Below, in pieces: positions 3,520 to 47,136 of a stretch of 64,000 bases of DNA; the first letter of the stretch is position 1; the number at the start of each line of letters is the position of its first letter. The notes below the pieces were generated by a model that worked only from the letters and a program-made list of their open reading frames with translations, was not told where the DNA came from and searched no databases. Location: positions 62,001 through 126,000 of IMG/VR virus record IMGVR_UViG_3300027985_001318; one strand, given 5' to 3'. The translations under genes were made by a program, and so were the position numbers.

Positions 3520-3608
3520 GTTGTAGATATTATGTAAAAGTTGGTTTTGTTTGGTCGTTTCCGTTGTCACACTGTCTAGCTGTTCTTACTTCTGCCATTT
3601 CCATTTTA

Positions 3609-3636
3609 GAGGAGGGCTTTCGCCCTCCTCATTTTT
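3609..3636. terminator. terminator between convergent genes
   Basis: GAGGAGGGC-TTTC-GCCCTCCTC with T tract. Confidence 0.7.
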
Positions 3637-3734
3637 GCCTCGAGCCGGTTATCGTAAAGAGAGCCGATAGAAAAGACCTTCTCGTGCTGGGTATAGCAAT
3701 TGTTTAATGAACACGGCAAGAAGTTTCTTTTTCA

Positions 3735-4565
3735 TTAGTTGCAACCACCCACCATATACTGAGTATTGCGCTTCATGCGCTCAGGATCGTTCAGGAACAG
3801 CATCTTACCCATCTTCTCATTACGGAAGTCCTTATAGGACTGCTCTGCGTCAGAATAAGAATCAACCACTTCACGAATCCGGCCCAAAGCTTGACCGCCG
3901 ATCAACTGGCCCATGTCGAGAGAGATGTTCAGTTTACGATAGATATAAGCTTTAGTAGCCAGTACTACGAATTCAGCAAACATATCGTAGTAGGGTGGCG
4001 TAATAAAACTGAGTTCATTATCTCCGGAGAGCATGCAGCGTAGGAACAGGTCGCCGGACATCGGGATAATATCCGAGATCAGTATCGTATTGGTAGCTAT
4101 CAGCCTCACGTTAGAAGTAGAAACCTTCGGGATGGGACTAAAAGCTGACTGCATGTTAGAGATCGCGTCAGTTACGACAGAACGCCCTACGTCACCGTTC
4201 TGTAAAAAGTTCATGGTAGAGTTACCATAACCACCTCCCCAGTTACCGAGACGTCCATAGGAGACGTACATGCAGCTAGAGATTTCCCGCCCTTGAGTAA
4301 GCGCTAGTGGAATTCGGTAGATATGGCTAAACTGATCGGTAAACTCTGGAACAATACCAACCAGCGGTACAGTGAATTCACCAGCGCCACGGTTATTGAT
4401 ATCTTGCCGAACACGTTTATCGATTACCATTTCTCTGATCATGGCTGGGATATTAACTTGACCGTGCCAGGCGAAATCGTATTTGGGCTTAAAAGCTAAT
4501 TCGAGGATCTCCTCGGGAATTTCCTGGAATACTTCATCCAGAGCTTTTTCTATAGGGCCGTACAT
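3735..4565 (-). CDS. conserved virion-associated protein (phiKZ gp32-like)
   Basis: AGGAGG RBS; recalled N-terminal pattern PIxKALDEV..EIPxEIL; position upstream of phuZ. Confidence 0.6.
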   Translation of the reverse strand: MYGPIEKALDEVFQEIPEEILELAFKPKYDFAWHGQVNIPAMIREMVIDKRVRQDINNRGAGEFTVPLVGIVPEFTDQFSHIYRIPLALTQGREISSCMYVSYGRLGNWGGGYGNSTMNFLQNGDVGRSVVTDAISNMQSAFSPIPKVSTSNVRLIATNTILISDIIPMSGDLFLRCMLSGDNELSFITPPYYDMFAEFVVLATKAYIYRKLNISLDMGQLIGGQALGRIREVVDSYSDAEQSYKDFRNEKMGKMLFLNDPERMKRNTQYMVGGCN

Positions 4566-10006: not shown

Positions 10007-10211
10007 GGCATATACCTACCTCAAACTCCGTTTGGTATCTAACCAAACGGTTTTCATTGGGTTGAACTGGATCCGTGAAGATACCATAGAGGCTACTCAA
10101 CGACATCGTGCTGAGGTGGTGGTTGAGGACGTTGGGCCGAGCGATGTTGAAAACATCCGCTTGGCTTTGGTTAGCAACGGGTTTACTAAACTCAGTATCA
10201 AACTGTCTTAA
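9801..10211 (+). CDS. conserved protein (phiKZ gp49-like, SH3-like)
   Basis: TAAGGAG RBS; recalled motifs HAQIYPLLP..T.DD, IGLNWI; directly upstream of DNA polymerase. Confidence 0.75.
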   Translation: MTAILSQVPIGSTVSFETYAPQIIGAVISDAVVLSHLDAESVRMLGGDPYSKHAQIYPLLPSGTVDDAEAYTYLKLRLVSNQTVFIGLNWIREDTIEATQRHRAEVVVEDVGPSDVENIRLALVSNGFTKLSIKLS

Positions 10212-10243
10212 AAAAAGTAGGGGGGTTGCCCCTACTTTTTTTT
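10210..10243 (+). terminator. intrinsic terminator
   Basis: GTAGGGG..CCCCTAC followed by T8. Confidence 0.75.
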
Positions 10244-10305
10244 CAGTTTATTTGAACCAGCTGTACCGTTTTATAGAAGCTAGGTATTTTTTAGGGTTGA
10301 CTAAG

Positions 10306-12483
10306 ATGAAATATCAGATAACTACCAGCAAACGCGGTATAGAAGTAATCAATCCATTTGTGCTAAACAAAGAACATTATAAACGCAGTATCGATATGTT
10401 CAGCTATGCCGAACAACAATACGCTCTGTATTTGCGAATCATGACAGGTGACGATTATGAGAAATGTCTAGACTTCGTGAAACGAGCTTTTGGGAAAGAC
10501 GGTCGATTCAAGAAACAAAGCCCTCAAGTACTAGTGCTGTCAAGACATACCGAGGCTAATCGCGAAAAAGAAACCATCGATTTCGATGACTTGTTACGTG
10601 ATGTGGTGGCGAAAGACCGTATCATGTCGCCAAGTATGGCGGTATACCACTCACCAAAAGTCAAAGAATCCATCGTAGCCAAGTTCATTGGTGAAAACGT
10701 AGGTTTGCGCGGTAAAGCAAAAAAAGAAATGTTCGCAGCAGATCGTGCCGGTAACAAGATACTCGAGGCAATCAAAGACGGAGAACAAGGTTCTTACAAA
10801 ACCTCTAATAACTCACTATCTGGTGCACAGCTTTCCAAATACTCTCCGTTGTGGTTACCGTCGGCACATTCATCGCTAACCAGTACTTGCCGCACAGCAG
10901 CTGCATACGCCAATGCTAACAACGAAAAACTTCTACACGGTAACCGCCATTATTACAACCCAGAGGTTGTTACAGAGAACATTGTAGCCATCATTTACCA
11001 GACGGACATGACGGCTTTTGAACAAATAGTTAATCGTTATAGTCTCTATATCCCGACAGCAGATGATTGCTGGAATGAGATTGTTCGCAGTGCAAAGTTT
11101 TATAACTGGGTGAATGAAATCACTAAGGCCCCTATTTTCTCCCTCCTAGAACGTTGTAGTGGGTTGGAGAGAGCTGCTTTCCTTTATACCGGAGATCTGT
11201 ACCAGGTAGCTAAGTACAATGACGCTATGATGCGCGAGTTTATTGGGAAGTGGATCACTATCCCAGAAGTTGGTTTGGTAGATAATCCAGAGGACTATTT
11301 CGAAACCCTTAACTCAGATTCTACAGCTTACATCTGTAGTCTTTGTGCGCATTTGACAGAGAACCGGGATTTCAAAACTCTTAAAGAAGTCGACCCGAAA
11401 GCTTATCAAATAGTCGGCACGCGAATAAAACAGACCTATGACGTGATGAAGGAGTATTCAGACTTCATTTACACAATTATGACTACTTCTGTAGTTCCTC
11501 ACAGTGTAGCTATGTTTACCGAAGCTACAAGACGAGCCGGTGTGGTGTCAGATACCGACTCAACTATCTTTACGGTGCAGAACTGGGTTGAGTGGTATAC
11601 TGGGGAGATCTCCATTAACCGCACAGCCAACGCTATCCGCAACGTAACTATCTACTTTGCATCACAGTCCATCATTCACGTTTTAGCTATGATGTCCGCC
11701 AATATGGGCGTTATTCGCGAACTAATACATCAGTTGGCGATGAAGAACGAGTTTGCATTCCCAGTATTTGGGTTGACCTCAATGGCCAAGCATTACTACG
11801 CACTTCAAGCTGAGCGTGAAGGTTTGGTTTATGATGTGCCTAAGATGGAAATAAAAGGCGTTGGGATGAAGAATTCCAAAGCCCCGCCTAAGGTAACCAA
11901 GGCCGCCAAGGACTTCGTGAAACGCGCAATGAACCAAATACTCCATGGCGGTAAAGTAGAGATAATCCCAGAGCTGAGAAAAATAGGTGATCTTGAAAGA
12001 GAAATCTTTCAAGCCCTTCGTGACGGTAAGTCAGATCTTCTTAGCCGAATGGAAGTAAAGCCGGCAGATAGTTACCCGAACCCGAACAAGTTATCTACTC
12101 CTTACGGATATCACATGTTCTGGGAAAAGGTATTTGCTCCTAAGTACGGTAGTGCTCCAGAACCCACCTATCGTGGGATCAAAGTATCCCTAGATGCAGG
12201 TAAGGCAACCAGTTATCGTGAATGGCAAGACTCCATAGCGGATGAGGGCATACGGCAACGGCTGAAAGAATGGGTAATGGAACATCGCAAAACTGGCATC
12301 ACCACAATGGTTGTTCCGGAAACCATCGCTGACCGCATAGGTATTCCGGAAGAGCTAGTGTTAGGTATGAACCTTCGAAAGCTGGTTTATACCACGATGT
12401 CAACTTTCTACCTGGAACTGGAACCTTTCGGCTTCTATTTCAACAACCCCAACATAACCAGGCTAGTTTCCGACCATTACTAG
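10306..12483 (+). CDS. family B DNA polymerase, palm subunit (phiKZ gp50-like)
   Basis: Motif B KTSNNSLSG, motif C VSDTDS, K.YYA, EIKGV; likely start ATG 10306. Confidence 0.88.
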   Translation: MKYQITTSKRGIEVINPFVLNKEHYKRSIDMFSYAEQQYALYLRIMTGDDYEKCLDFVKRAFGKDGRFKKQSPQVLVLSRHTEANREKETIDFDDLLRDVVAKDRIMSPSMAVYHSPKVKESIVAKFIGENVGLRGKAKKEMFAADRAGNKILEAIKDGEQGSYKTSNNSLSGAQLSKYSPLWLPSAHSSLTSTCRTAAAYANANNEKLLHGNRHYYNPEVVTENIVAIIYQTDMTAFEQIVNRYSLYIPTADDCWNEIVRSAKFYNWVNEITKAPIFSLLERCSGLERAAFLYTGDLYQVAKYNDAMMREFIGKWITIPEVGLVDNPEDYFETLNSDSTAYICSLCAHLTENRDFKTLKEVDPKAYQIVGTRIKQTYDVMKEYSDFIYTIMTTSVVPHSVAMFTEATRRAGVVSDTDSTIFTVQNWVEWYTGEISINRTANAIRNVTIYFASQSIIHVLAMMSANMGVIRELIHQLAMKNEFAFPVFGLTSMAKHYYALQAEREGLVYDVPKMEIKGVGMKNSKAPPKVTKAAKDFVKRAMNQILHGGKVEIIPELRKIGDLEREIFQALRDGKSDLLSRMEVKPADSYPNPNKLSTPYGYHMFWEKVFAPKYGSAPEPTYRGIKVSLDAGKATSYREWQDSIADEGIRQRLKEWVMEHRKTGITTMVVPETIADRIGIPEELVLGMNLRKLVYTTMSTFYLELEPFGFYFNNPNITRLVSDHY

Positions 12484-16050: not shown

Positions 16051-17358
16051 ATGAGCGCATACGTTCCTTATATCTCCAAACACGATCAATTAGAGGAGGA
16101 ATATGTCAGCGGTTTACATCTTGATATCGTTGATTTCGATTTGATGGCTGCGATTAGTTCGCGCCCTCCAGTCTACGCCAACGATCTTGATGTTAACGAA
16201 ATCGAGTCAAGACGCAAACTTCAGGATGAGCTCTACACCCACTACGAGTCGGACACCATAGACAACATCCCCGTTTGTAGCTGCCAGAAATACAAAGGCG
16301 CTCGCTATTACGGGATAGTCTGTGATCGTTGCGGTTCAGAGGTAATGATTCCCTCGGAACGGCCAATAGAATCCGCTCTTTGGATCCGCGCCCCAGAAGG
16401 CGTTCCTGGTCTGATAAACCCATTAGTTTACAGTAACTTGGTAGCGACCTTCAAGAAAAACGGCGTAAGTATCATTGAGTGGTTGATCGACCCGTATTAC
16501 AAGCCCCCGAAAAATAACAGCGGCCAAGTAATTGCTCGACTGGAAGCTTTAGGGGTGCAGCGTGGCTTGAAGAACTTCATCTTCAACTTCGACCAAATCA
16601 TCACCATCCTCACAGCTAATACGTTGTTCAGCAACAAAAAGAAAGCGCCTCTGCAACGTTTCAAGGAATGGATCGACCGTAACAGAGATCGTCTGTTCCC
16701 CCAAGCTTTGCCGATACCATCCAAGCTTTCCTTCATTCTGGAAGACTTGGCGGTTGGTCGCTTCGCTGACCACAACATGGCTGATGCTCTGGATGCGGTA
16801 AGTACCATAGCGTCACTGAACTCTGGCATAACGGCACCTTCACAGCAACAACGTGAAAGTCGTGCAGTGAAAGCCTGTGCTCAACTGGCCTCTTTCTACG
16901 AAGGTCAATGTCGTAGTAGCCTTGGTGATAAACCTGGGCTGTTTAGACGCCACGTTTTTGGTACAAGACCAGCAATGAGTTTCCGGGCAGTAATCACCTC
17001 GCTGTCGGCTAACCACCGATATGATGAGATGCACTTGCCTTGGTCGCTCTCTGTGTCACTCTTCAGGGTCCATATCTACAACTACTTGTTGAAGATGGGA
17101 CTTTCTCCACTGGAATGTCGTAAACAAATCGCTGAAGCGATCATCAAATTTGATCCGGTAATTTACGATATCCTGAACAACCTTATTTCCACCCACAGCT
17201 CCGGTAAAGGTTGGCCTTCGTTCTTGCAACGAAACCCTTCACTGAAGCGTTTGTCTGCTCAACGTCTCTTCATTACCAAAATCAAAACAGATGTCGAAGA
17301 TTACACGATTTCGTTCTCTGTTCTTGTACTTAAGGGAATGAACGCTGACTTTGACGGT
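16051..17358 (+). CDS. non-virion RNAP beta'-N subunit (gp55-like), exon 1
   Basis: Zn ribbon CSC...CDRC, KPGLFRRHVFG.R, RAVI, RNPSL, ends NADFDG. Confidence 0.9.
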
Positions 17359-18725
17359 AGAGCATTGCCGTCAATAGTTTCTTGGTTTCTGTGGCTAAGA
17401 AACTTACTAAACTCATCTAACTGCTGGAAGTACGTAATATAGTAGCAACCAAAGCGGAACTGGAAACGGTAGACGTCATGGTATGAAAATGGTTACTATT
17501 AGCTCGTCGTGAGACGTCAAAATCGTTAATCAGCAACGAAGCACCTTAAACTACGAAAGTAATCCTACTCCTAGGAGTGTGTGTGTTCAGAGACTATCGA
17601 AACCACATCGATGCAATGTCGATGGAAGGGAGTAGAGTAGGGGAAACCCGAAACGGTGAGTATTGGCCACATTTGAGCCAGTAAAGATATAGCCCACAAT
17701 GTTCTGTTTCCTAGTTTCATCTTCCAGGAGGTGAAATGAAGAAAGAAATCCCAGGAACTGTAAATTATAGCGCTGATGACCGTGGAATTATTTACGGCCC
17801 AGATGGTAATGTGAGAAACACCTATCGGAATGGCGATGGTTATATCACTACACTAATCAAGACCGACAATGGTATTTTCCGAACTGTTGGTGTTCATCGA
17901 TTAGTGGCGCTAGCTTTTAAGGCCGAGGAACGTTCGCCAGAGAAATTCCAAATCAATCATCTTGATGGAAACATTGAAAACAATGTCCCAGACAACCTCG
18001 ATTGGGAAACTCCAGCAAACAATAACCTACACGCATCCTTAGTTTCAGAAGGGTACGAACGAAAGATCGTTACTGTAAATCAAAAAGGTTCAGTTAACTA
18101 CTTCAAGAATCTTCGCGAAGTGGCTGTTTTTGCCAATTCAAAAATAGGCGATGTCTGGAAAGCTTTCAGAGACAAAGAACAGATAGCTGGACTAAGTATT
18201 TACATTAATCTAAACCTCGGGCCAGAATTTCATCTAACCAAGATCAAAAACAGAGACCATTTAGGTAGACAGATAAAACGAAATCTTAAGATGCAAAACC
18301 TAGAAACAGGAGAAATTAAACTAGGCCATGCTTCTGAATTAGCTAGATTTTTCGGAGTCTCTACAGCGCACATTACTACCTCAGTAACAGAAGAAATTCT
18401 GCATTTATTCAACGAAAAATGGATAATTGTAGATGAATGCTCGGAGTTTCCAGAAATAGATAACGAAACCTGGCTATATCTGAAAGAACGTGGAAAATCA
18501 AAACCTGTCTTTGCAATCGATCCAAGCAATCGACAAGTTATTTTACGTTTTAAAAGTGCAGCCGAGTTCGTTAGAAATTCTGGTCTGAGTAAGAAAGCTG
18601 TTACTGTTAGGTTGAAAGCGAGTAAGTGCGGTAAACTAGATGGTTGGGCGTTTGGTTACCAAGATTGTTTAGATGAACAATCGTTAAAAGAAATGTAAAG
18701 AACTGGGAAACAGAACGGTTTTACG
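17359..18725 (+). mobile_element. group I intron in nvRNAP beta'
   Basis: P1 TTGACGGT/GCCGTCAA with U-G at the splice site; P AACTGCTGGAA, Q AATCAGCA, R GTTCAGAGACTA, S AAGATATAGCCC; terminal G18725; splicing restores NADFDGD. Confidence 0.9.
17736..18698 (+). CDS. intron-encoded HNH homing endonuclease
   Basis: VHRLVALAF...INHLDGNIENN..DNLDW; NUMOD1-like C-terminal repeats; AT-rich. Confidence 0.9.
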   Translation: MKKEIPGTVNYSADDRGIIYGPDGNVRNTYRNGDGYITTLIKTDNGIFRTVGVHRLVALAFKAEERSPEKFQINHLDGNIENNVPDNLDWETPANNNLHASLVSEGYERKIVTVNQKGSVNYFKNLREVAVFANSKIGDVWKAFRDKEQIAGLSIYINLNLGPEFHLTKIKNRDHLGRQIKRNLKMQNLETGEIKLGHASELARFFGVSTAHITTSVTEEILHLFNEKWIIVDECSEFPEIDNETWLYLKERGKSKPVFAIDPSNRQVILRFKSAAEFVRNSGLSKKAVTVRLKASKCGKLDGWAFGYQDCLDEQSLKEM

Positions 18726-41712: not shown

Positions 41713-41789
41713 GTAAACGGCAAAAACTTAGAGGAGGCAATTGCCTCCTCTAATCAGGCTATTGTGTGAAACACTATCCGGAGAGAATC

Positions 41790-43559
41790 ATGCGTAAAAA
41801 TCATCTGACATTAGCATTGGAGCAAAGCTTTGCTCCAACCGCAGAACTCACTTATAGTGAGGAAGGTTTCAAGGACCTGTTCCGTAAAATTTACGATAAA
41901 TGGAAAGAGTGGTTCCCGACCACTTACTGGACACTGGAAGGTGCCAAGAATGGTCTGATCAAAAAGACCGATCAGTTGCGAGCTTTCGGTAAAATCGGTA
42001 ACGATTACGCTGACATGATAGCTGGTGGTCTGATCGCCAACGAAGCCGCACTTAATGCGCTCTCATCGTCTTTCAAGTCCAAGCGTCCCCTGGTTTCCAC
42101 AGCCCGTTATCTTGGCGAGGTAAACCGTTTCATTGCAAAGATCAATAACCGTGGTCGGATGCAGCGCGGTCGTTTTAACCTGGAGCTGGCCGAACTGGCT
42201 ATCGAAGGACGTGATGAAAAGATCAAGGAGTTTATCGACCAGGCTACACGGTTCGGTAATCTTACTCTTTTGAGAAAGTACGAAGAAGCCGTAGAGTTGG
42301 CTCAATTAGCCATCAGACAAGGCCGTGAAGGTTTGGTGATCGCCGCCGGTCTGAACGCCAAGGCGTTTTCTGTGAGCGTCGAAAAACTCCCGTTGGAGAA
42401 TTTCGATACCGACATGTACTTGCGTACTTACAACCCCAGTAACTCCTTCCAGATCTCTTTCCAAGACCTTGAGCGCAAAGTCTTGAGCGAGTACTACACT
42501 CCTTTGTTTGAGACGTTGCGTTTCTTTGTGGATAGCCGCGCCTATAGCCGGGTGTTGGGTCTTCTGTGGGCACTCGACATGTACGACTACGAAGCAGAAG
42601 ATCACGAAGACAGAACTGACAGAGCACGTCGAGAAAATTTCCTTCGTCTAGTCCTGGAACTTTTCGGTGTCGGTTTCGAAGACGCGATCAAAGTCGTCAC
42701 CAAACAAGTCCAGAACTCCTACGTGGCGATGTTGGCGTTCCGTTGCCAATGTAGCGACTACATGACCTTACATCGACTGCTCTTGCAGGCACAAATCGCT
42801 TACGCCGAAGAAACCATTCGTCGATTGCGCGATGCCGACCCACAGACGATCAGCCAAGAGGCTTTCGATGAAAGTCTCTATCAACAGCCGCTTAGCGTCC
42901 CTGGCACTTACAGTTTCGGTAAAACCACCGTTAAGGTCGAGCCGGAGCCGAGCTCCTTCGAAGGAAACGTTCCTTCCGAAGAGAACTATCGGCCGTTGCC
43001 GAAACGCCAAAAGGGCGAACAGGTACTAGCCAATGCCTTCCAAGAACAGCTGAGGGCTTCCCTAGCTAACGCAAACAACCCTCTCTCCTTAGAGGGAGTT
43101 GAAGTTCTTGACGCAGTAGCCAAGCGGTTGTTCGCTGGGATTTTCAGCGCTGAAGCTGCCGGTGAAGCGAGTAACGATGATCCGATGGACGTGGTAGTGG
43201 AAACGGCTAGGGATGAGATCGAGTTGGTGGTCGATGAGTACGAGAAGGAACCCTGCTTCCAGCCCGTCTACAGTGCCTTCAGTGACGCGTTCACTAAGAC
43301 CCTGGACTTCACTCAGACCTATCGAGCTAACTTGGGCTTTGATACCCCAGACATGAAAATCGGTGACTGCGTTGAAGCTTTCAGTGACGGCACGGTCTAC
43401 CCGCAACGCGACTGTAAGCAAGTGGCTGAATGCCGCGTAGGGAAAGGCTGCTGGGAGTTTAAGACCCAGGAAGACGGTGAGTGGTTTACCGCTCCGGACT
43501 CCGATTACCTCGAGTCCTACCTGAACCAAGACAACACCACGGTACATCAGTATCGCTAA
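41790..43559 (+). CDS. putative internal head protein
   Basis: Several prohead-protease-type sites (ALE, SEEGF, SQEAF, SLEG). Confidence 0.55.
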   Translation: MRKNHLTLALEQSFAPTAELTYSEEGFKDLFRKIYDKWKEWFPTTYWTLEGAKNGLIKKTDQLRAFGKIGNDYADMIAGGLIANEAALNALSSSFKSKRPLVSTARYLGEVNRFIAKINNRGRMQRGRFNLELAELAIEGRDEKIKEFIDQATRFGNLTLLRKYEEAVELAQLAIRQGREGLVIAAGLNAKAFSVSVEKLPLENFDTDMYLRTYNPSNSFQISFQDLERKVLSEYYTPLFETLRFFVDSRAYSRVLGLLWALDMYDYEAEDHEDRTDRARRENFLRLVLELFGVGFEDAIKVVTKQVQNSYVAMLAFRCQCSDYMTLHRLLLQAQIAYAEETIRRLRDADPQTISQEAFDESLYQQPLSVPGTYSFGKTTVKVEPEPSSFEGNVPSEENYRPLPKRQKGEQVLANAFQEQLRASLANANNPLSLEGVEVLDAVAKRLFAGIFSAEAAGEASNDDPMDVVVETARDEIELVVDEYEKEPCFQPVYSAFSDAFTKTLDFTQTYRANLGFDTPDMKIGDCVEAFSDGTVYPQRDCKQVAECRVGKGCWEFKTQEDGEWFTAPDSDYLESYLNQDNTTVHQYR

Positions 43560-43566
43560 AGCGAAC

Positions 43567-43596
43567 AAAAGAGAGGGCTTTCGCCCTCTCTTTTTT
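43567..43596. terminator. bidirectional terminator
   Basis: GAGAGGGC-TTTC-GCCCTCTC with A and T tracts. Confidence 0.85.
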
Positions 43597-43837
43597 AGGC
43601 TGCTTGCTGAAGATTTTTCTCCTCCATGTAAGCCGCCAACATGGTTTCCAGAGTAGGAGTTTTATAAACATCCCTACAGAATTCAAGAGCGTTAGTTCTA
43701 CCACCAGTGATATTGATCCCAATCTTTCTACGCATAGCCAAGTCAAGACCTTGAATCTGTGAAACTTCTCTAAAGGTTGTTTCATGACTGATATTCAAGA
43801 GCACCTGACCGTTGGGATATGCGGCAGCTACGTCGAT
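43595..43837 (-). CDS. DNA polymerase exonuclease/motif-A subunit (gp82-like), exon 2
   Basis: IDVAAAYPNG...NISHETT..E; joins HVGD. Confidence 0.85.
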   Translation of the reverse strand: MDVAAAYPNGQVLLNISHETTFREVSQIQGLDLAMRRKIGINITGGRTNALEFCRDVYKTPTLETMLAAYMEEKNLQQAA

Positions 43838-45420
43838 CGAATTGTTCGGATGGGTCGTTAAGCCACCCCGCCTCTCGCTGTCGTCACGACAGTAAAAGAC
43901 TGCTTCAGCTGTTAGCTGAATGCCCAGACTATATCTTCTTCCGCCAGTATACAAAGCGTTTATGCATTTAACGCTCTGAGTCGTTCCTTCACGGAACACT
44001 GTGGAGATTACCATTTCGAGCCCACTTGGTGCCCTACTCCCTGGCTAAGGGATAGTCGTTGAACCTTACGCATAGCTTGTTTCACAACAATCTTTAGCGT
44101 CTTGGATGCTGATTATGGATTGCAAGTTAGCTAGTCTTTTGAACCGCTAACATCCATGTGATTCTTTCTGGCTCTCGCCCGCATTCACGCCCGAGCTTTC
44201 GCTCCACGTTGTAGCTCACACGGCTTTACCTTACTCCCAGCAGTTAAATAATGATCACTCCACCGTTACCGATAGAGCGGACAAGACGAAAAAGACTATT
44301 AACGTTTAGAGAACTTAAATTTGTACCCGTTTTTACCGAAGCCGCTATTTCGTTTACAGGCGTAGTAAATGCTCGCCGGCCTTAGACCAACGGCACTACC
44401 GGCCTCTAAAGCAGAAGCAAACTCAGTCACAACACCATCCCTATTTTCAGCAATAACTGGCTCGTTATTAATGCCGCCAGTACGGACAGGGATTAGTTTA
44501 TCTTTATCGACATCAGGCCAAGGTCTTGGATCATCGGCATACTTGAACAAACGCATATCGGCATATACGTTCAAACCAATACCGTTCTTCAATCGCTGCA
44601 TTATCAGATCACCTCTTCTCATCCCGTAATGTTTAGCTGCGGATTGAGTTGTCGGGAATCTTAATTCCTTACCAGTAAGTAATTCTTTAACAACCACTGG
44701 TCGACTACTATTCGGCCTTAAACCGAGATCGTAGGCGTGTAGGGAATTTTCGCGATAGCTGGTCCATTCCAAATTATCCAGTTCGTCAGAACCAGGTATC
44801 CCATTTAAATGGTTAATGACCATAGTTCTAACTACCTTATTTGGATGTTTAAACACTACACCCAAAGCCCTATGTCTAAAAAGAGTTTGTGATTTACCGC
44901 TGTCGTCTAATAGCCTGGTGTAGAAATAACCGCCAGTACTATTACGTTCCAAATTAGGTGGAGTAATACTCCACACTTTCTTTTTCATGGTCTCGGTATT
45001 CCAGATCTCACCGTTTCTACTTATCGCATAAACAGTAAAACCAGGTATCCTGTAAAAACCAGGCTTTTCATCCCACTCAACCAAACCTTTGAAACGGTAA
45101 CTTAGATTATCGATGTTTAGATTACCGATATCCTCATCTTCGTACAGTGGTTCGATCTCCTTCATGAAGAAATAGTCTAGCTTGAAACCATAAAACGTTA
45201 TCAACAATAGTGTGGCAATCGGGTAAAAGATCTCTCCATTCACCCACGTAAGTTTCACTGAGAAATGCCCGCCTACTAAAGACGGTGTTATTTCTCCTTC
45301 GGCATCAAAAATCTGCCCATTATCTCGTATGAGGTAACGCCTACATGAATGTGGTAAAAAACGTTCTTTCATCATTTCGTCCTACATGACAATATATCTC
45401 ATATTATCGTGCAGTTTTTT
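43838..45420 (-). mobile_element. group I intron in DNA polymerase gene
   Basis: Minus strand P AACTGCTGGGAG, Q AATCAGCA, R GGTTCAACGACTA, S AAGATATAGTCT; terminal G43838; exon 1 ends in U. Confidence 0.88.
44299..45375 (-). CDS. intron-encoded HNH homing endonuclease
   Basis: NUMOD4-like YRIPGF..YAIS..G; HRAL...F, INHLNG...D..DNLEW; degenerate HNH-like N-terminal module. Confidence 0.88.
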   Translation of the reverse strand: MMKERFLPHSCRRYLIRDNGQIFDAEGEITPSLVGGHFSVKLTWVNGEIFYPIATLLLITFYGFKLDYFFMKEIEPLYEDEDIGNLNIDNLSYRFKGLVEWDEKPGFYRIPGFTVYAISRNGEIWNTETMKKKVWSITPPNLERNSTGGYFYTRLLDDSGKSQTLFRHRALGVVFKHPNKVVRTMVINHLNGIPGSDELDNLEWTSYRENSLHAYDLGLRPNSSRPVVVKELLTGKELRFPTTQSAAKHYGMRRGDLIMQRLKNGIGLNVYADMRLFKYADDPRPWPDVDKDKLIPVRTGGINNEPVIAENRDGVVTEFASALEAGSAVGLRPASIYYACKRNSGFGKNGYKFKFSKR

Positions 45421-47136
45421 ATCGCCTACATGAAGGTACACCTGCGAAGTGAGTTCTGGGAACTCCACTAACGGATGGTATTCGCTCTCCACTATCTGGT
45501 GTGCCGGTAGAGTTACAATCCATTCCTTTGGAGTAACTACCAGCTCATCTAGTTCTGTAGCCATTTGTTTCGAAGTAGAAGCAATAACGTGCTTTTGCTG
45601 TAAACCGAAGAAATGCAATCGGTCACAGGTACGGCGCGGTTGAGAAGAGAACTTACTATAATCCGAGCTACGACATAACAGAGAAATCGTAGACCCGAGA
45701 TCCATTGTTTTCTCGTCCAACAACTCAACTCCGATACAGTCGAACAAGTTGTAGATTAAGTATTCCAGCTTGTAGTTCTTTTGCATGAATTCGTGCCATG
45801 CCAAGCGTTCTAAGCCATCGGCTTCTTTAAACTTCAACTTACGAATGCCTAAGTGACGTTCCAGAGTAGCGTCTAGAGCATAGGACATCTTACCCTTACC
45901 CAGACGAATCTTCTGGTAAACGCACATGCCATCGATCGGATAGAACGAGGCTGGACAAGTTACGACGTGCCAACGTTCGGCCGGCGATAACGGCATTGTT
46001 CTACCAGATTCCGTTACCTTTATCTTAGTTCCTTCTTGATAATTGAAATAACGGAACTCCGGAGGTACTGATGGGTCGCTGAAAACTTCGGCTGGATCAA
46101 TACCGGCGTATTTCAGGTGCTCGAGCATTTTTGGAATATCGAAATTGATGTTCCAAAACGCCAAGAAATCAGGTTTCCATTCATGAGCCTTACCAATCAA
46201 TTTAACTACCAAATCGGCAGGATTGTCAGCAAACATTATTTCCAAGTTAATGTTGCGTTTGTAAACTACATCCTTACCAATGTCTTCCAATAACTCCTCA
46301 TTACCTTCTTTGGACAGGGCTTCTACCAAGCTAACCCACTTTTCCATCTCCATCGGCTGCAATTGCTTGCTCTTAGCTGTGGCTTCGTAGGTTTTATAGA
46401 GCTTAGGTAGGCGGTCCATGAAATCGTCTTCATCGCGGACCATCTCAGCAACTAAAGACGCTTGCTGAACCTGCTCTCCTAAACCACCGCCGGAAAAGAA
46501 CCCCTGTAAGAACATCTTGGAGTTATCGTTAAGAGCTAAGTAATGATGAAACTTCTCACGTATCCGAGTAGTTACATTGGGCCCGTCGTCAACAAACGAA
46601 CGGTTAATCACCAGCAACGCTTTATCTTTGAAAGTCAAAGAACCGGAGATGATATCGCGCCCATCGGTGTAGAGAACATCGGTTTCCAAGTCACAAACCG
46701 CCACACTGTTCAGACTGACGTGGTCTGGCCAGCGATCTTTGTATTGCTGTTTGTAGATGGTAGTAGATGGCACATCGATGCCGTAGACATAGGGACTGTC
46801 GGCTAAGAGACGAAGATCACCATTCCATCTTTTACGCAACGCCCTCGCCACATTGATACCTAGGTCTCGCTGTGTAGATGACATCCGATGGACTCTGTCT
46901 ATGCTTTCGAACAGCTTCTTATCTTTGTGTTTCCTGAACCCATCTTTTGTTACCCAAAAGTCCCGTTTGAAGTTAAAAACCTTACGAGTAAAAGGAATGA
47001 CCCGACCATCGTTAAGGTGGACTGCTTCCTTAACAAACAACATATCGTCCCTGCTTTCGGGGTCTTGCGATGGCGCATAGATTACATGACGACATTCAAT
47101 ACCGACGACATCCGATTTCTTAAAAGGTAAATTCAT
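45421..47136 (-). CDS. DNA polymerase exonuclease/motif-A subunit (gp82-like), exon 1
   Basis: ExoI DLETD, ExoII WNINFD, ExoIII YNLFD; spliced product about 652 aa. Confidence 0.88.

What the first reader, a model, noticed from the sequence alone, without database searches (positions are those of the whole stretch)
43838..45420. Group I intron splitting motif A of the split DNA polymerase, with a non-canonical P1
Seen: splicing joins HVGD to IDVAAAYP, the polB motif A. The ORF track shows this as two ORFs with false termini. The HNH ORF lies 5' of the ribozyme core, apparently looped out of P1. The best P1 pairs exon AGGCGA and intron AAAAAACTG with TAGTCTTTTTCGTCT just after the HNH stop (about 44298-44284). 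This leaves the splice-site U opposite U or bulged instead of the near-universal U-G. Introns in this polymerase subunit are less familiar to me than those in RNAP genes.
Basis: partly seen in the sequence, partly recalled or inferred. Interest (0 to 1): 0.6.

Follow-up and report, generated by a model that had tools for sequence, protein, structure and literature searches.

The report
Self-splicing intron in phage DNA polymerase

Summary
Exon 1 and exon 2 abut without gap or overlap in intron-less orthologues (62 of 71 IMG/VR chimallivirus loci) and at phrog_3011 positions 494|495. The 3' 460 nt are a subgroup-IA-like ribozyme. It scores below threshold in Rfam, but comparison with a sister intron (L007) gives 11 compensatory pair changes and no broken pair. 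The HNH gene lies in a 1,133-nt insertion at the tip of the P1 loop; L007 has one U there.

The non-canonical P1 is not supported. Eleven related introns in this gene all carry the guide sequence G-UCC just 5' of P2. That G pairs with the splice-site U, and the adjacent pair covaries (A:U, U·G, U:A, G:C). Here G44282 pairs with U45421, giving P1 = GAU|AA / UUGUC.

Splicing itself was not observed. This is a new member of a known kind; the same-site intron in phage Goslar is already noted in a 2026 preprint.

The parts
45421..47136 (-). Exon 1 of the DNAP-N gene (N-terminal domain, exonuclease and start of the palm domain of the split family-B polymerase); ends ...LHVGD, last base U45421
   Evidence: phrog_3011 positions 3-494, E 4e-167; PhiKZ gp82 homologue
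43838..45420 (-). Group I intron, 1,583 nt; starts AAAAAACUG, ends ...AAUUCG (omega-G 43838)
45419..45423 (-). P1 5' strand: exon G A U (45423-45421) plus intron A A (45420-45419); U45421 is the splice-site U
   Evidence: family table; L007
44285..45417 (-). 1,133-nt endonuclease cassette at the tip of the P1 loop; replaced by a single U in the sister intron L007 and in wastewater contigs
   Evidence: (joint 44284->45418, one letter between, in 2 runs)
44299..45375 (-). HNH (I-HmuI / PhiPA3 gp210-like) homing-endonuclease ORF, 358 aa, with an AGGA Shine-Dalgarno sequence; HNH motif around H189...N201...N210; in the exon-1 frame behind one TAG
   Evidence: 37% to HPP-Temi intron ORF, 33% to PhiPA3 gp210; phrog_59 E 2e-21
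44284..44298 (-).
44280..44284 (-). Internal guide sequence / P1 3' strand UUGUC; G44282 pairs with U45421 (U·G wobble); C44279 faces exon C-4 (mismatch)
44258..44277 (-). P2 hairpin CUCUAUCG-GUAA-CGGUGGAG
   Evidence: one compensatory G-C to A-U and one U·G to U-A change versus L007
44237..44256 (-). P3 5' strand (44256-44246), J3/4 AAC, P4 5' strand UGCUGG (44242-44237)
   Evidence: P3 partner assigned by homology with Goslar, Temi and PhiPA3
44064..44112 (-). P4 3' strand (44112-44107) and P6/P6a/P6b (44105-44064)
   Evidence: (three compensatory changes in P6b)
44006..44057 (-). P7 5' strand GACUA (44057-44053), P7.1 (44051-44039), P7.2 (44034-44018), P3 3' strand AAAUGGUAAUC (44016-44006)
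43927..44005 (-). Branched P8 region (44005-43940), J8/7 AGAAGAUA and P7 3' strand UAGUC (43931-43927)
   Evidence: (three compensatory changes in one P8 arm)
43838..43920 (-). P9 (43920-43904), P9.1 (43892-43878), P9.2 (43868-43852) and 3' tail ending in omega-G 43838
   Evidence: (three compensatory changes in P9.1)
43595..43837 (-). Exon 2 (80 aa plus stop): I-D-VAAAYPNGQVLLNISHETT...; the D is the motif-A catalytic aspartate
   Evidence: phrog_3011 495-572; PhiKZ D562 in motif A, 76 residues from the C-terminus
10108..12483 (+). Partner gene DNAP-C (rest of palm, fingers, thumb): the other half of the split polymerase
   Evidence: (PF20286 divDNApol E 2e-223; PF00136 24.2 bits)

Best explanation
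This is a mobile, subgroup-IA-like group I intron in the DNAP-N gene of an uncultured chimallivirus-like (phiKZ-like) jumbo phage. It sits between the codons for D572 and I573, one codon 5' of the motif-A catalytic Asp.

P1 is canonical but short. Exon G-A-U (45423-45421) and intron A-A (45420-45419) pair with the guide sequence U-U-G-U-C (44284-44280), which lies three bases 5' of P2. U45421·G44282 is the cleavage-site wobble pair. A 1,133-nt cassette with an HNH homing-endonuclease gene sits in the P1 loop, so P1 has to close over 1.1 kb.

Inferred mechanism: exogenous G attacks at 45421|45420, omega-G 43838 docks, and exon ligation restores ...LHVGD-IDVAAAYPN..., giving a complete DNAP-N that joins DNAP-C (window 10108-12483). 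The HNH enzyme, translated from its own ribosome-binding site, probably nicks intron-less polymerase alleles of co-infecting relatives. That would drive homing or marker exclusion, as shown for I-HmuI and PhiPA3 gp210.

Shown here: boundaries, reading-frame restoration, conserved and covarying ribozyme helices, the position of the ORF in L1, and conservation of the G-UCC guide. Inferred: that splicing occurs, that P1 is the 5-bp helix, and what the endonuclease does.
For: Junction.

Ribozyme: RF00028 full-length match at 28.3 bits, E 1e-4. Sister introns at the same or adjacent sites score 49-92 bits, six of the seven reported above the 50-bit threshold. Against L007 (88% identical core) there are 11 two-sided compensatory changes, 6 one-sided changes and 0 broken pairs among 129 predicted pairs.

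ORF in L1: wastewater contigs and L007 join 45418 to 44284 through a single U. PhiPA3 (ORF-less) and HPP-Temi (HNH ORF) form the same kind of pair.

Canonical P1: 11 of 11 family members have G-UCC 5' of P2 with U·G at the splice site, A-U and G-C at positions -2 and -3, and four different pair types at +1. Rfam's model gives the same P1 for PhiPA3. L007 has only 11 nt between the 5' splice site and P2, which leaves room for no other guide sequence.

Motif A and split polymerase.
Against: No spliced RNA was seen. The four public runs laid on the region (two of them metatranscriptomes, kept as contigs) show no 45421/43837 joint, and exon coverage there was very low.

The canonical P1 has only 3 exon base pairs plus 2 A-U pairs (-3.2 kcal/mol as an isolated duplex).

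Unlike HPP-Temi, L014 and Goslar, this intron has no significant distal helix closing the ORF loop.

Rfam's score for this copy is below the gathering threshold.

P3, P5 and P8 were assigned by inspection and homology, not by a full 3-D-consistent model.
Confidence: 0.85

Rival explanations
1. One reading: the functional P1 is the long helix between exon AGGCGA plus intron AAAAAACUG and 44298-44284, with the splice-site U opposite U or bulged. That would make it a natural group I intron without the U·G wobble.
For: The helix exists and is the more stable isolated duplex (-10.1 versus -3.2 kcal/mol). It lies directly after the ORF stop codon. A 99%-identical wastewater variant has lost one A of the A-run (45415) and one U of the U-run (44289), which keeps the register.
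Against: The sister intron L007 has the same exon and the same UUGUCC but lacks this strand entirely. The G-UCC guide with U·G is conserved in 11 of 11 relatives, with covariation next to it. The helix is only at the 2-3% level against chance, and seven other sites in the intron pair as well. The two indels are in the only long homopolymers of the non-coding parts of the cassette, come from contigs at about 5x depth, and would also be tolerated by the canonical model.
Confidence: 0.04
2. Both helices form. The canonical P1 is the catalytic one. The cassette-borne strand (44298-44285) is an alternative pairing partner of the 5' splice site that competes with the weak P1, and so delays or tunes splicing or protects the unspliced RNA that serves as endonuclease mRNA.
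For: The two helices use the same exon bases and are mutually exclusive. The alternative is thermodynamically favoured. There is marginal statistical support and the paired A/U-run indels. The exon 12-mer UUCAUGUAGGCG recurs in the ORF 5' end, which could offer a third partner.
Against: There is no conservation test, because only one cassette of this type is available. Comparable helices arise by chance in this A/U-rich RNA. The other ORF-bearing relatives instead have in-register distal helices that support P1 rather than compete with it.
Confidence: 0.09
3. The insertion is not spliced. The polymerase N-subunit is further split into two polypeptides, or is a pseudogene, or the insert is a split intein as was proposed for phage MIJ3.
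For: No spliced RNA was observed. ORF callers give separate ORFs. MIJ3 authors interpreted a similar HNH insert as a split intein.
Against: Exon 2 has no start codon or ribosome-binding site of its own at the junction. The separation would fall one codon before the catalytic Asp. The insert has a complete, covarying group I core with a U at the 5' splice site and a terminal G. The HNH ORF is free-standing, not fused in frame as an intein would be. The genome is complete with terminal repeats and has no second DNAP-N.
Confidence: 0.02

Closest known systems
Intron in DNAP-N (gp068) of Escherichia phage Goslar, carrying HNH/NUMOD gene gp069
   Same: Same gene and the identical insertion point (FVAD|LDISSSYPN versus HVGD|IDVAAAYPN). 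Homologous HNH ORF (29% identity) in the P1 loop, 5' of a related IA-like core. G-UCC guide with U·G. Its existence and exon coordinates are stated in the Methods of a 2026 preprint.
   Different: Goslar's exon is GGAU, giving 4 exon pairs, and it has an 8-bp in-register distal helix closing the ORF loop. The core sequence is diverged, and the P5 and P6 extensions differ.
PhiPA3 / HPP-Temi introns in DNAP-N (ORF-less 344 nt / with HNH ORF)
   Same: Same ribozyme family and guide sequence. HPP-Temi's HNH is the closest relative of this ORF (37%). They show the same ORF-less versus ORF-in-L1 relationship as L007 versus this intron.
   Different: Inserted 6 nt further 3', directly after the catalytic Asp codon (HVADLD|IVSTYPN). 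Their P1 is 7-8 bp long. In HPP-Temi the ORF runs through the guide sequence and P2.
PhiPA3 gp210 intron in the virion RNA polymerase gene (Birkholz et al. 2024, PMC11620839)
   Same: Chimallivirus group I intron with a homologous HNH nicking endonuclease (33% identity over residues 107-331). The P6-P7 region of the ribozyme is 77% identical. It provides the likely biological role, interference with intron-less co-infecting relatives.
   Different: Different host gene. No functional data exist for the present element.
HNH-bearing group I introns in DNA polymerase genes of Bacillus phages SPO1/SP82/Bastille (I-HmuI, I-BasI), and T4 td/nrdB/sunY subgroup IA2 introns
   Same: Phage group I introns in DNA-metabolism genes at active-site codons. 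Nicking HNH homing enzymes. P7.1/P7.2 between P7 and P3'. Similar cores with divergent or exchanged ORFs (from the literature cited, and from established knowledge).
   Different: Those polymerases are family A (SPO1) or the genes differ. Their ORFs sit in other peripheral loops. No sequence-level relation was tested here.
Fungal mitochondrial IA1-like introns with the endonuclease gene in the P1 loop (e.g. Hypomyces cox3-i2, PMC4964425)
   Same: Precedent for an ORF looped out of P1.
   Different: LAGLIDADG genes in an organellar setting; unrelated sequences.

Membership tests
Group I intron (Rfam RF00028) | Conserved catalytic core P3-P9 recognised by the covariance model | tested here: inconclusive
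   Full-length match (model 1-253) but 28.3 bits against a 50-bit threshold, E 1e-4 in a 2.1-kb search; 15.3 bits in the whole-genome search. Sister introns of the same family score 49-92 bits.
Group I intron (Rfam RF00028) | Helices maintained by compensatory substitutions | tested here: met
   Versus L007: 11 two-sided and 6 one-sided changes, 0 broken pairs, in P2, P6b, P7.1, P8 and P9.1.
Group I intron (Rfam RF00028) | U at the end of the 5' exon paired to G of an internal guide sequence in P1 | tested here: met
   U45421·G44282. G-UCC 5' of P2 in 11 of 11 relatives, covariation at the adjacent pair. The CM-assigned P1 of PhiPA3 is identical in layout.
Group I intron (Rfam RF00028) | Terminal G (omega-G) and exact restoration of the host reading frame | tested here: met
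   G43838. Exon 1 and exon 2 abut in intron-less orthologues and at profile positions 494|495.
Group I intron (Rfam RF00028) | Self-splicing with guanosine cofactor | not testable with these tools
   No spliced joint in the public contigs laid on the region. Needs RT-PCR or in vitro splicing.
Subgroup IA | Extra helices P7.1 and P7.2 between P7 5' and P3 3' | tested here: met
   Hairpins 44051-44039 and 44034-44018 lie between GACUA (P7) and AAAUGGUAAUC (P3'). Both are kept in L007 with a compensatory or one-sided change. Assignment is by inspection; IA1 versus IA2 was not resolved.
HNH homing endonuclease (I-HmuI / HNH_3 type) | HNH catalytic motif and family-profile match | tested here: met
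   phrog_59 E 2e-21 and phrog_959 E 2.5e-11. The motif INH(189)LNG...N(201)LEW...N(210)SLH is present. Pfam HNH_3 scores only 18.3 bits against a 24.8 cut-off. Homologous to PhiPA3 gp210, E 9e-24. Activity and target were not tested.
Chimallivirus split family-B DNA polymerase, N subunit (PhiKZ gp82 type) | N-terminal domain, exonuclease and first part of the palm with motif-A Asp about 76 residues from the C-terminus; separate DNAP-C gene | tested here: met
   phrog_3011 E 4e-167. tblastn to about 297 phiKZ-like phages. D-x4-YPN followed by NISxET in exon 2, with D 78 residues from the C-terminus, compared with PhiKZ D562 of 638. DNAP-C found at 10108-12483. No direct sequence hit to solved PolB structures, so the motif-A assignment rests on the pattern and on the PhiKZ structure paper.

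The most novel reading that the evidence does not exclude
The endonuclease cassette brings its own exon-binding strand (44298-44285). This strand out-competes the unusually weak 3-bp P1 of this copy. The precursor would then toggle between a 'closed' form, with the splice site sequestered and the RNA serving as HNH mRNA, and a splicing-competent form. That would be a mobile-gene-encoded switch on a group I ribozyme. The matched single-base deletions in the A-run and U-run of a wastewater variant would then be covariation.
Probability: 0.08. Interest if true: 0.55.

Novelty: new member of a known kind. Interest (0 to 1): 0.3.

Why it matters
For annotation: DNAP-N of this phage is one 652-codon gene, not two ORFs. 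The same correction applies to PhiPA3 genes 085/084, HPP-Temi, Goslar, probably MIJ3, and about one in eight chimallivirus genomes in IMG/VR.

For biology: one ribozyme family with the guide G-UCC has colonised three ...GGAU sites around the polymerase active site of nucleus-forming jumbo phages. It is found without an ORF, with an HNH gene in the P1 loop, or with a LAGLIDADG gene after P7. This is a clear natural series for studying how endonuclease genes invade ribozymes. It may also extend the PhiPA3 'weaponised intron' story from the RNA polymerase to the DNA polymerase.

The claimed exception to the U·G rule, which would have been the surprising part, is not supported.

Tried and rejected
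- **Near-identical DNA search.** Megablast of the region against phage genomes found nothing. blastn of the core gave only short P6-P7 matches.
- **IMG/VR searches.** The ORF-less junction pattern and the exon-1 peptide found nothing close. The metagenome scan gave one true relative (L007) and one chance hit (L006, unrelated GC-rich DNA).
- **Motif A by sequence against solved structures.** There was no PolB hit with RP12 DNAP-N, with exon 2, or with a small profile. The assignment therefore rests on the D-x4-YP / NISxET pattern and on the PhiKZ cryo-EM paper.
- **Energy scanning for the guide sequence.** This does not discriminate: chance sites reach -10 to -18 kcal/mol in all four introns tested.
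- **Composite P1.** A canonical proximal helix plus an A-run/U-run distal helix gains nothing in the nearest-neighbour model (-0.3 kcal/mol). The distal-helix test is negative for this intron.
- **Guide sequence upstream of the ORF (45420-45376).** No G with more than 3 complementary bases was found by inspection.
- **Hairpin I1** (45436-45414 with 45362-45340). It puts A, not G, opposite the splice-site U and pairs the exon poorly, so it was rejected as P1.
- **First P3/P8 assignment.** My first assignment, taken from the cmscan alignment and RNAalifold, was revised after aligning Goslar, Temi and PhiPA3.
- **Spliced coding sequence.** It was never assembled.
Full report
**What is there**

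The window is bases 62001-126000 of a complete 223,650-bp IMG/VR virus record with direct terminal repeats. Its polymerase, RNA polymerase and structural genes match phiKZ-like, nucleus-forming jumbo phages (Chimalliviridae). The nearest cultured relatives, Xanthomonas phages LucasX and RTH11, are only about 48% identical in this protein. Near-identical DNA occurs in a hydrothermal-vent metagenome, which is the possible source, and related DNA occurs in many wastewater metagenomes.

The gene in question is on the minus strand. ORF 47136..45382 ends ...SQVYLHVGD followed by twelve read-through codons and TAG. ORF 44014..43595 begins inside non-coding RNA and contains IDVAAAYPNGQVLLNISHETT. Between them lies a 358-codon ORF (45375..44299).

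**The junction**

I searched the two exons separately, by reference.

- tblastn of exon 1 (45421-47136) and of exon 2 (43598-43837) against 50,697 phage genomes hits about 290 phiKZ-like phages. In intron-less ones the two matches abut to the base: Ralstonia FLC4-3B 250664/250665, FLC1-1B 249413/249414, RP12 240919/240920, Pseudomonas Noxifer 74434/74433.
- The PHROG family phrog_3011 (DNA polymerase) is matched at profile positions 3-494 by exon 1 and 495-572 by exon 2.
- In 71 IMG/VR loci fetched with an exon-2 profile, 62 have a gap of exactly 0 between the two parts.
- A protein alignment shows RP12 ...LRLHIGD-LDVSASYPNGE... against our ...VYLHVGD | IDVAAAYPNGQ....

The 5' exon ends in U and the intron ends in G.

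**The host gene and motif A**

A 2026 cryo-EM preprint on PhiKZ shows that chimallivirus polymerase is a two-gene family-B enzyme. [quoted passage not shown] DNAP-C carries motif C.

Our exon 2 reads I-D-VAAA-YPN...NISHET. This has the D-x4-YP(S/N) spacing of motif A, and the Asp lies 78 residues from the C-terminus, compared with 76 in PhiKZ. The partner gene is at window 10108-12483 (PF20286 'divergent family B polymerase', E 2e-223; PF00136 at 24.2 bits). The intron thus sits one codon 5' of the catalytic Asp codon.

Direct sequence searches against solved structures found no PolB. The motif-A call therefore rests on the pattern plus that paper.

**The ribozyme**

Rfam's group I model matches 44311-43909 over its full length, but below threshold (28.3 bits, E 1e-4). 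The low score is explained by large insertions in P5 and between P7 and P3'.

The strongest evidence is comparative. A metagenome contig (L007, found with the junction sequence of an ORF-less variant seen in read contigs) encodes a DNAP-N that is highly similar in the aligned C-terminal region and carries the same intron at the same site. With each intron's own ORF insertion removed, the cores are 88% identical. The differences cluster in helices: on the RNAalifold consensus structure there are 11 two-sided compensatory changes, 6 one-sided changes and no broken pair out of 129 pairs.

By inspection and homology the layout is as follows:

- P2: 44277-44258
- P3: 44256-44246 with 44016-44006
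- P4: 44242-44237 with 44112-44107
- P6: 44105-44064
- P7: 44057-44053 with 43931-43927
- P7.1 and P7.2: between P7 and P3', which makes this subgroup IA
- P8: a branched region
- P9, P9.1 and P9.2, followed by the tail ...AAUUCG

Seven sister introns at this or neighbouring sites score 49-92 bits in Rfam, six of them above the threshold.

**Where the ORF sits**

Wastewater contigs join 45418 to 44284 through one extra base, skipping 1,133 nt. L007 reads GGCGAU|AAA-U-UUGUCCG-P2.

The ORF belongs to the I-HmuI/HNH_3 type: phrog_59 at E 2e-21, an intact H...N...N motif, 37% identity to the HPP-Temi intron ORF, 29% to Goslar gp069 and 33% to PhiPA3 gp210.

L007 has no ORF in L1. It has a 760-nt insertion with a LAGLIDADG gene directly after the P7 5' strand. 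One ribozyme has therefore been invaded twice, by different endonuclease genes in different loops.

**P1**

It scores -9.8 to -10.1 kcal/mol with the splice-site U bulged. Three results argue against it being the functional P1.

1. It is only marginally unusual. 2.2% of 17-nt windows in the intron, and 3.4% of shuffles, pair as well with the same strand. Seven other non-overlapping sites are as good or better.
2. All of it except one base lies in the cassette that L007 lacks. L007 nevertheless has the identical exon (GUAGGCGAU) and the identical UUGUCCG before P2. With 11 nt between the splice site and P2, the only possible P1 in L007 is GAU|A-[AAUU]-UGUC, with a normal U·G pair.
3. Eleven related introns in DNAP-N all have G-UCC directly 5' of P2, and that G faces the splice-site U.
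   - The eleven are this one, L007, Goslar, L014, L060, HPP-Temi, PhiPA3, L065, L032 and two in L067.
   - Positions -2 and -3 pair as A-U and G-C in all eleven.
   - The pair on the intron side of the wobble covaries: A:U, U·G, U:A and G:C.
   - Rfam's covariance model independently draws this P1 for the ORF-less PhiPA3 intron at 71.7 bits.

In our intron the canonical P1 is therefore G45423-C44280, A45422-U44281, U45421·G44282, A45420-U44283 and A45419-U44284. It is one pair shorter than in the relatives, because the exon reads GCGAU (Gly codon GGC) where the other nine introns have GGAU. C-4 faces C44279.

- It competes with the weak canonical P1 for the same exon bases, and it is the more stable duplex in isolation.
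- A 99%-identical wastewater variant lacks one A of the A-run and one U of the U-run. This keeps the helix in register. However, these are the only long homopolymers in the non-coding parts of the cassette, and the contigs have only about 5x depth.
- In HPP-Temi, L014 and Goslar a significant distal helix closes the ORF loop in register with the canonical P1. In our intron the equivalent test is negative.

**Distribution and novelty**

Nine of the 71 IMG/VR chimallivirus loci (13%) carry an intron here. Five of them are at our site (HVxD|xD), counting the Goslar record held twice. Four are 6 nt downstream, directly after the catalytic Asp codon (HVADLD|IVSTYPN). One of those four loci (L067) has a second copy about 30 codons upstream (...W-I...). 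Each site follows GGAU, the complement of the guide sequence. This is what reverse-splicing or guide-directed site choice would predict.

Published and annotated status:

- The Goslar intron is mentioned, with exon coordinates identical to mine, in the Methods of a 2026 preprint.
- PhiPA3's 344-nt ORF-less intron is not annotated; genes 085 and 084 are listed separately.
- MIJ3's 'split intein with HNH' in its polymerase is probably the same element.
- Group I introns with HNH genes in phage polymerase genes, and endonuclease genes in P1 loops, both have precedents.

This is a new member of a known kind.

**Not shown**

Splicing itself was not observed. No 45421/43837 joint appears in the four runs laid on the region. 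Those runs are contigs from relatives and cover the exons thinly. The ribozyme core is covered far more deeply than exons or ORF, consistent with the core being shared among several genomes.

Noticed in passing
window 17362-17701 (+), with ORFs 16051..17442 and 17736..18698: A second group I intron (RF00028 44 bits, E 1.5e-9) follows an RNA polymerase beta-subunit exon (phrog_2987, E 2e-134). It is followed by another phrog_59 HNH endonuclease ORF, here 3' of the ribozyme core rather than in P1.
   Followed up: partly
genome G000 C1:37311-37651 (+) and C1:137178-137450 (+), outside the window (loci L002, L004): Two further RF00028 matches (56.4 bits, above threshold, and 18.4 bits). The phage therefore carries at least four group I introns.
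   Followed up: no
window 45433-45422 and 45349-45338 (minus strand): The 12-mer UUCAUGUAGGCG at the end of exon 1 recurs in codons 8-13 of the HNH ORF (conserved LPHSCRRY motif), 85 nt downstream. I estimate roughly 1 in 1000 by chance. A third, imperfect copy (CAUGUAGGACGA) overlaps the ORF's ribosome-binding site. Meaning unknown; it could be a decoy for the exon-binding strand or a recombination relic.
   Followed up: partly
window 45436-45414 with 45362-45340: Imperfect 23-nt inverted repeat (78% complementary) pairing the 5' splice-site region (…GAU|AAAAAAC) with ORF codons 5-12 (GUUUUUUACC…). The HNH start codon and Shine-Dalgarno sequence lie in the 51-nt loop. This is another possible alternative structure of the precursor.
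   Followed up: no
L007 1079-1838 (metagenome contig JACCDZ010191310.1): The sister intron has no ORF in P1. It has a 760-nt insertion with a LAGLIDADG endonuclease gene (phrog_11023) immediately after the P7 5' strand. The same ribozyme at the same site carries a different endonuclease family in a different loop.
   Followed up: yes
L063 4157-4500 = PhiPA3 (NC_028999) about 74310-74880, between genes 084 and 085: The model phage PhiPA3 has an unannotated 344-nt ORF-less group I intron (RF00028 71.7 bits) in DNAP-N, directly after the motif-A Asp codon. Its exon 2 lies within the separately annotated gene 084 ('hypothetical protein').
   Followed up: partly
L067 about 3607-4500 (IMGVR_UViG_3300036546_000143): Two paralogous group I introns (91.8 and 86.7 bits) lie about 100 nt apart in one DNAP-N gene, both after ...GGAU. 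One is at a third site (...KNW-I|VTLP...).
   Followed up: partly
window 43560-43601: G+C-rich hairpin (AGAGAGGGC-UUUC-GCCCUCUCU) flanked by A- and U-runs directly after the DNAP-N stop codon, between convergent genes (ORF 41766..43559 on + and DNAP-N on -). It looks like a bidirectional intrinsic terminator. L007 has the equivalent hairpin.
   Followed up: no
window 43820-44320 in public runs X3, X15, X19, X20: The ribozyme core is covered 10-100 times more deeply than the flanking exons or the HNH ORF in wastewater contigs. Some contigs leave the intron at 43842 into unrelated sequence. Closely related cores therefore sit in other genes or genomes in those samples.
   Followed up: partly
Pseudomonas phage MIJ3 (literature, PMC6892783): A 'putative split intein with HNH homing endonuclease' between two DNA polymerase B ORFs was reported. 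Given the family described here, it is probably a group I intron with an HNH ORF. I did not check the MIJ3 sequence itself.
   Followed up: no
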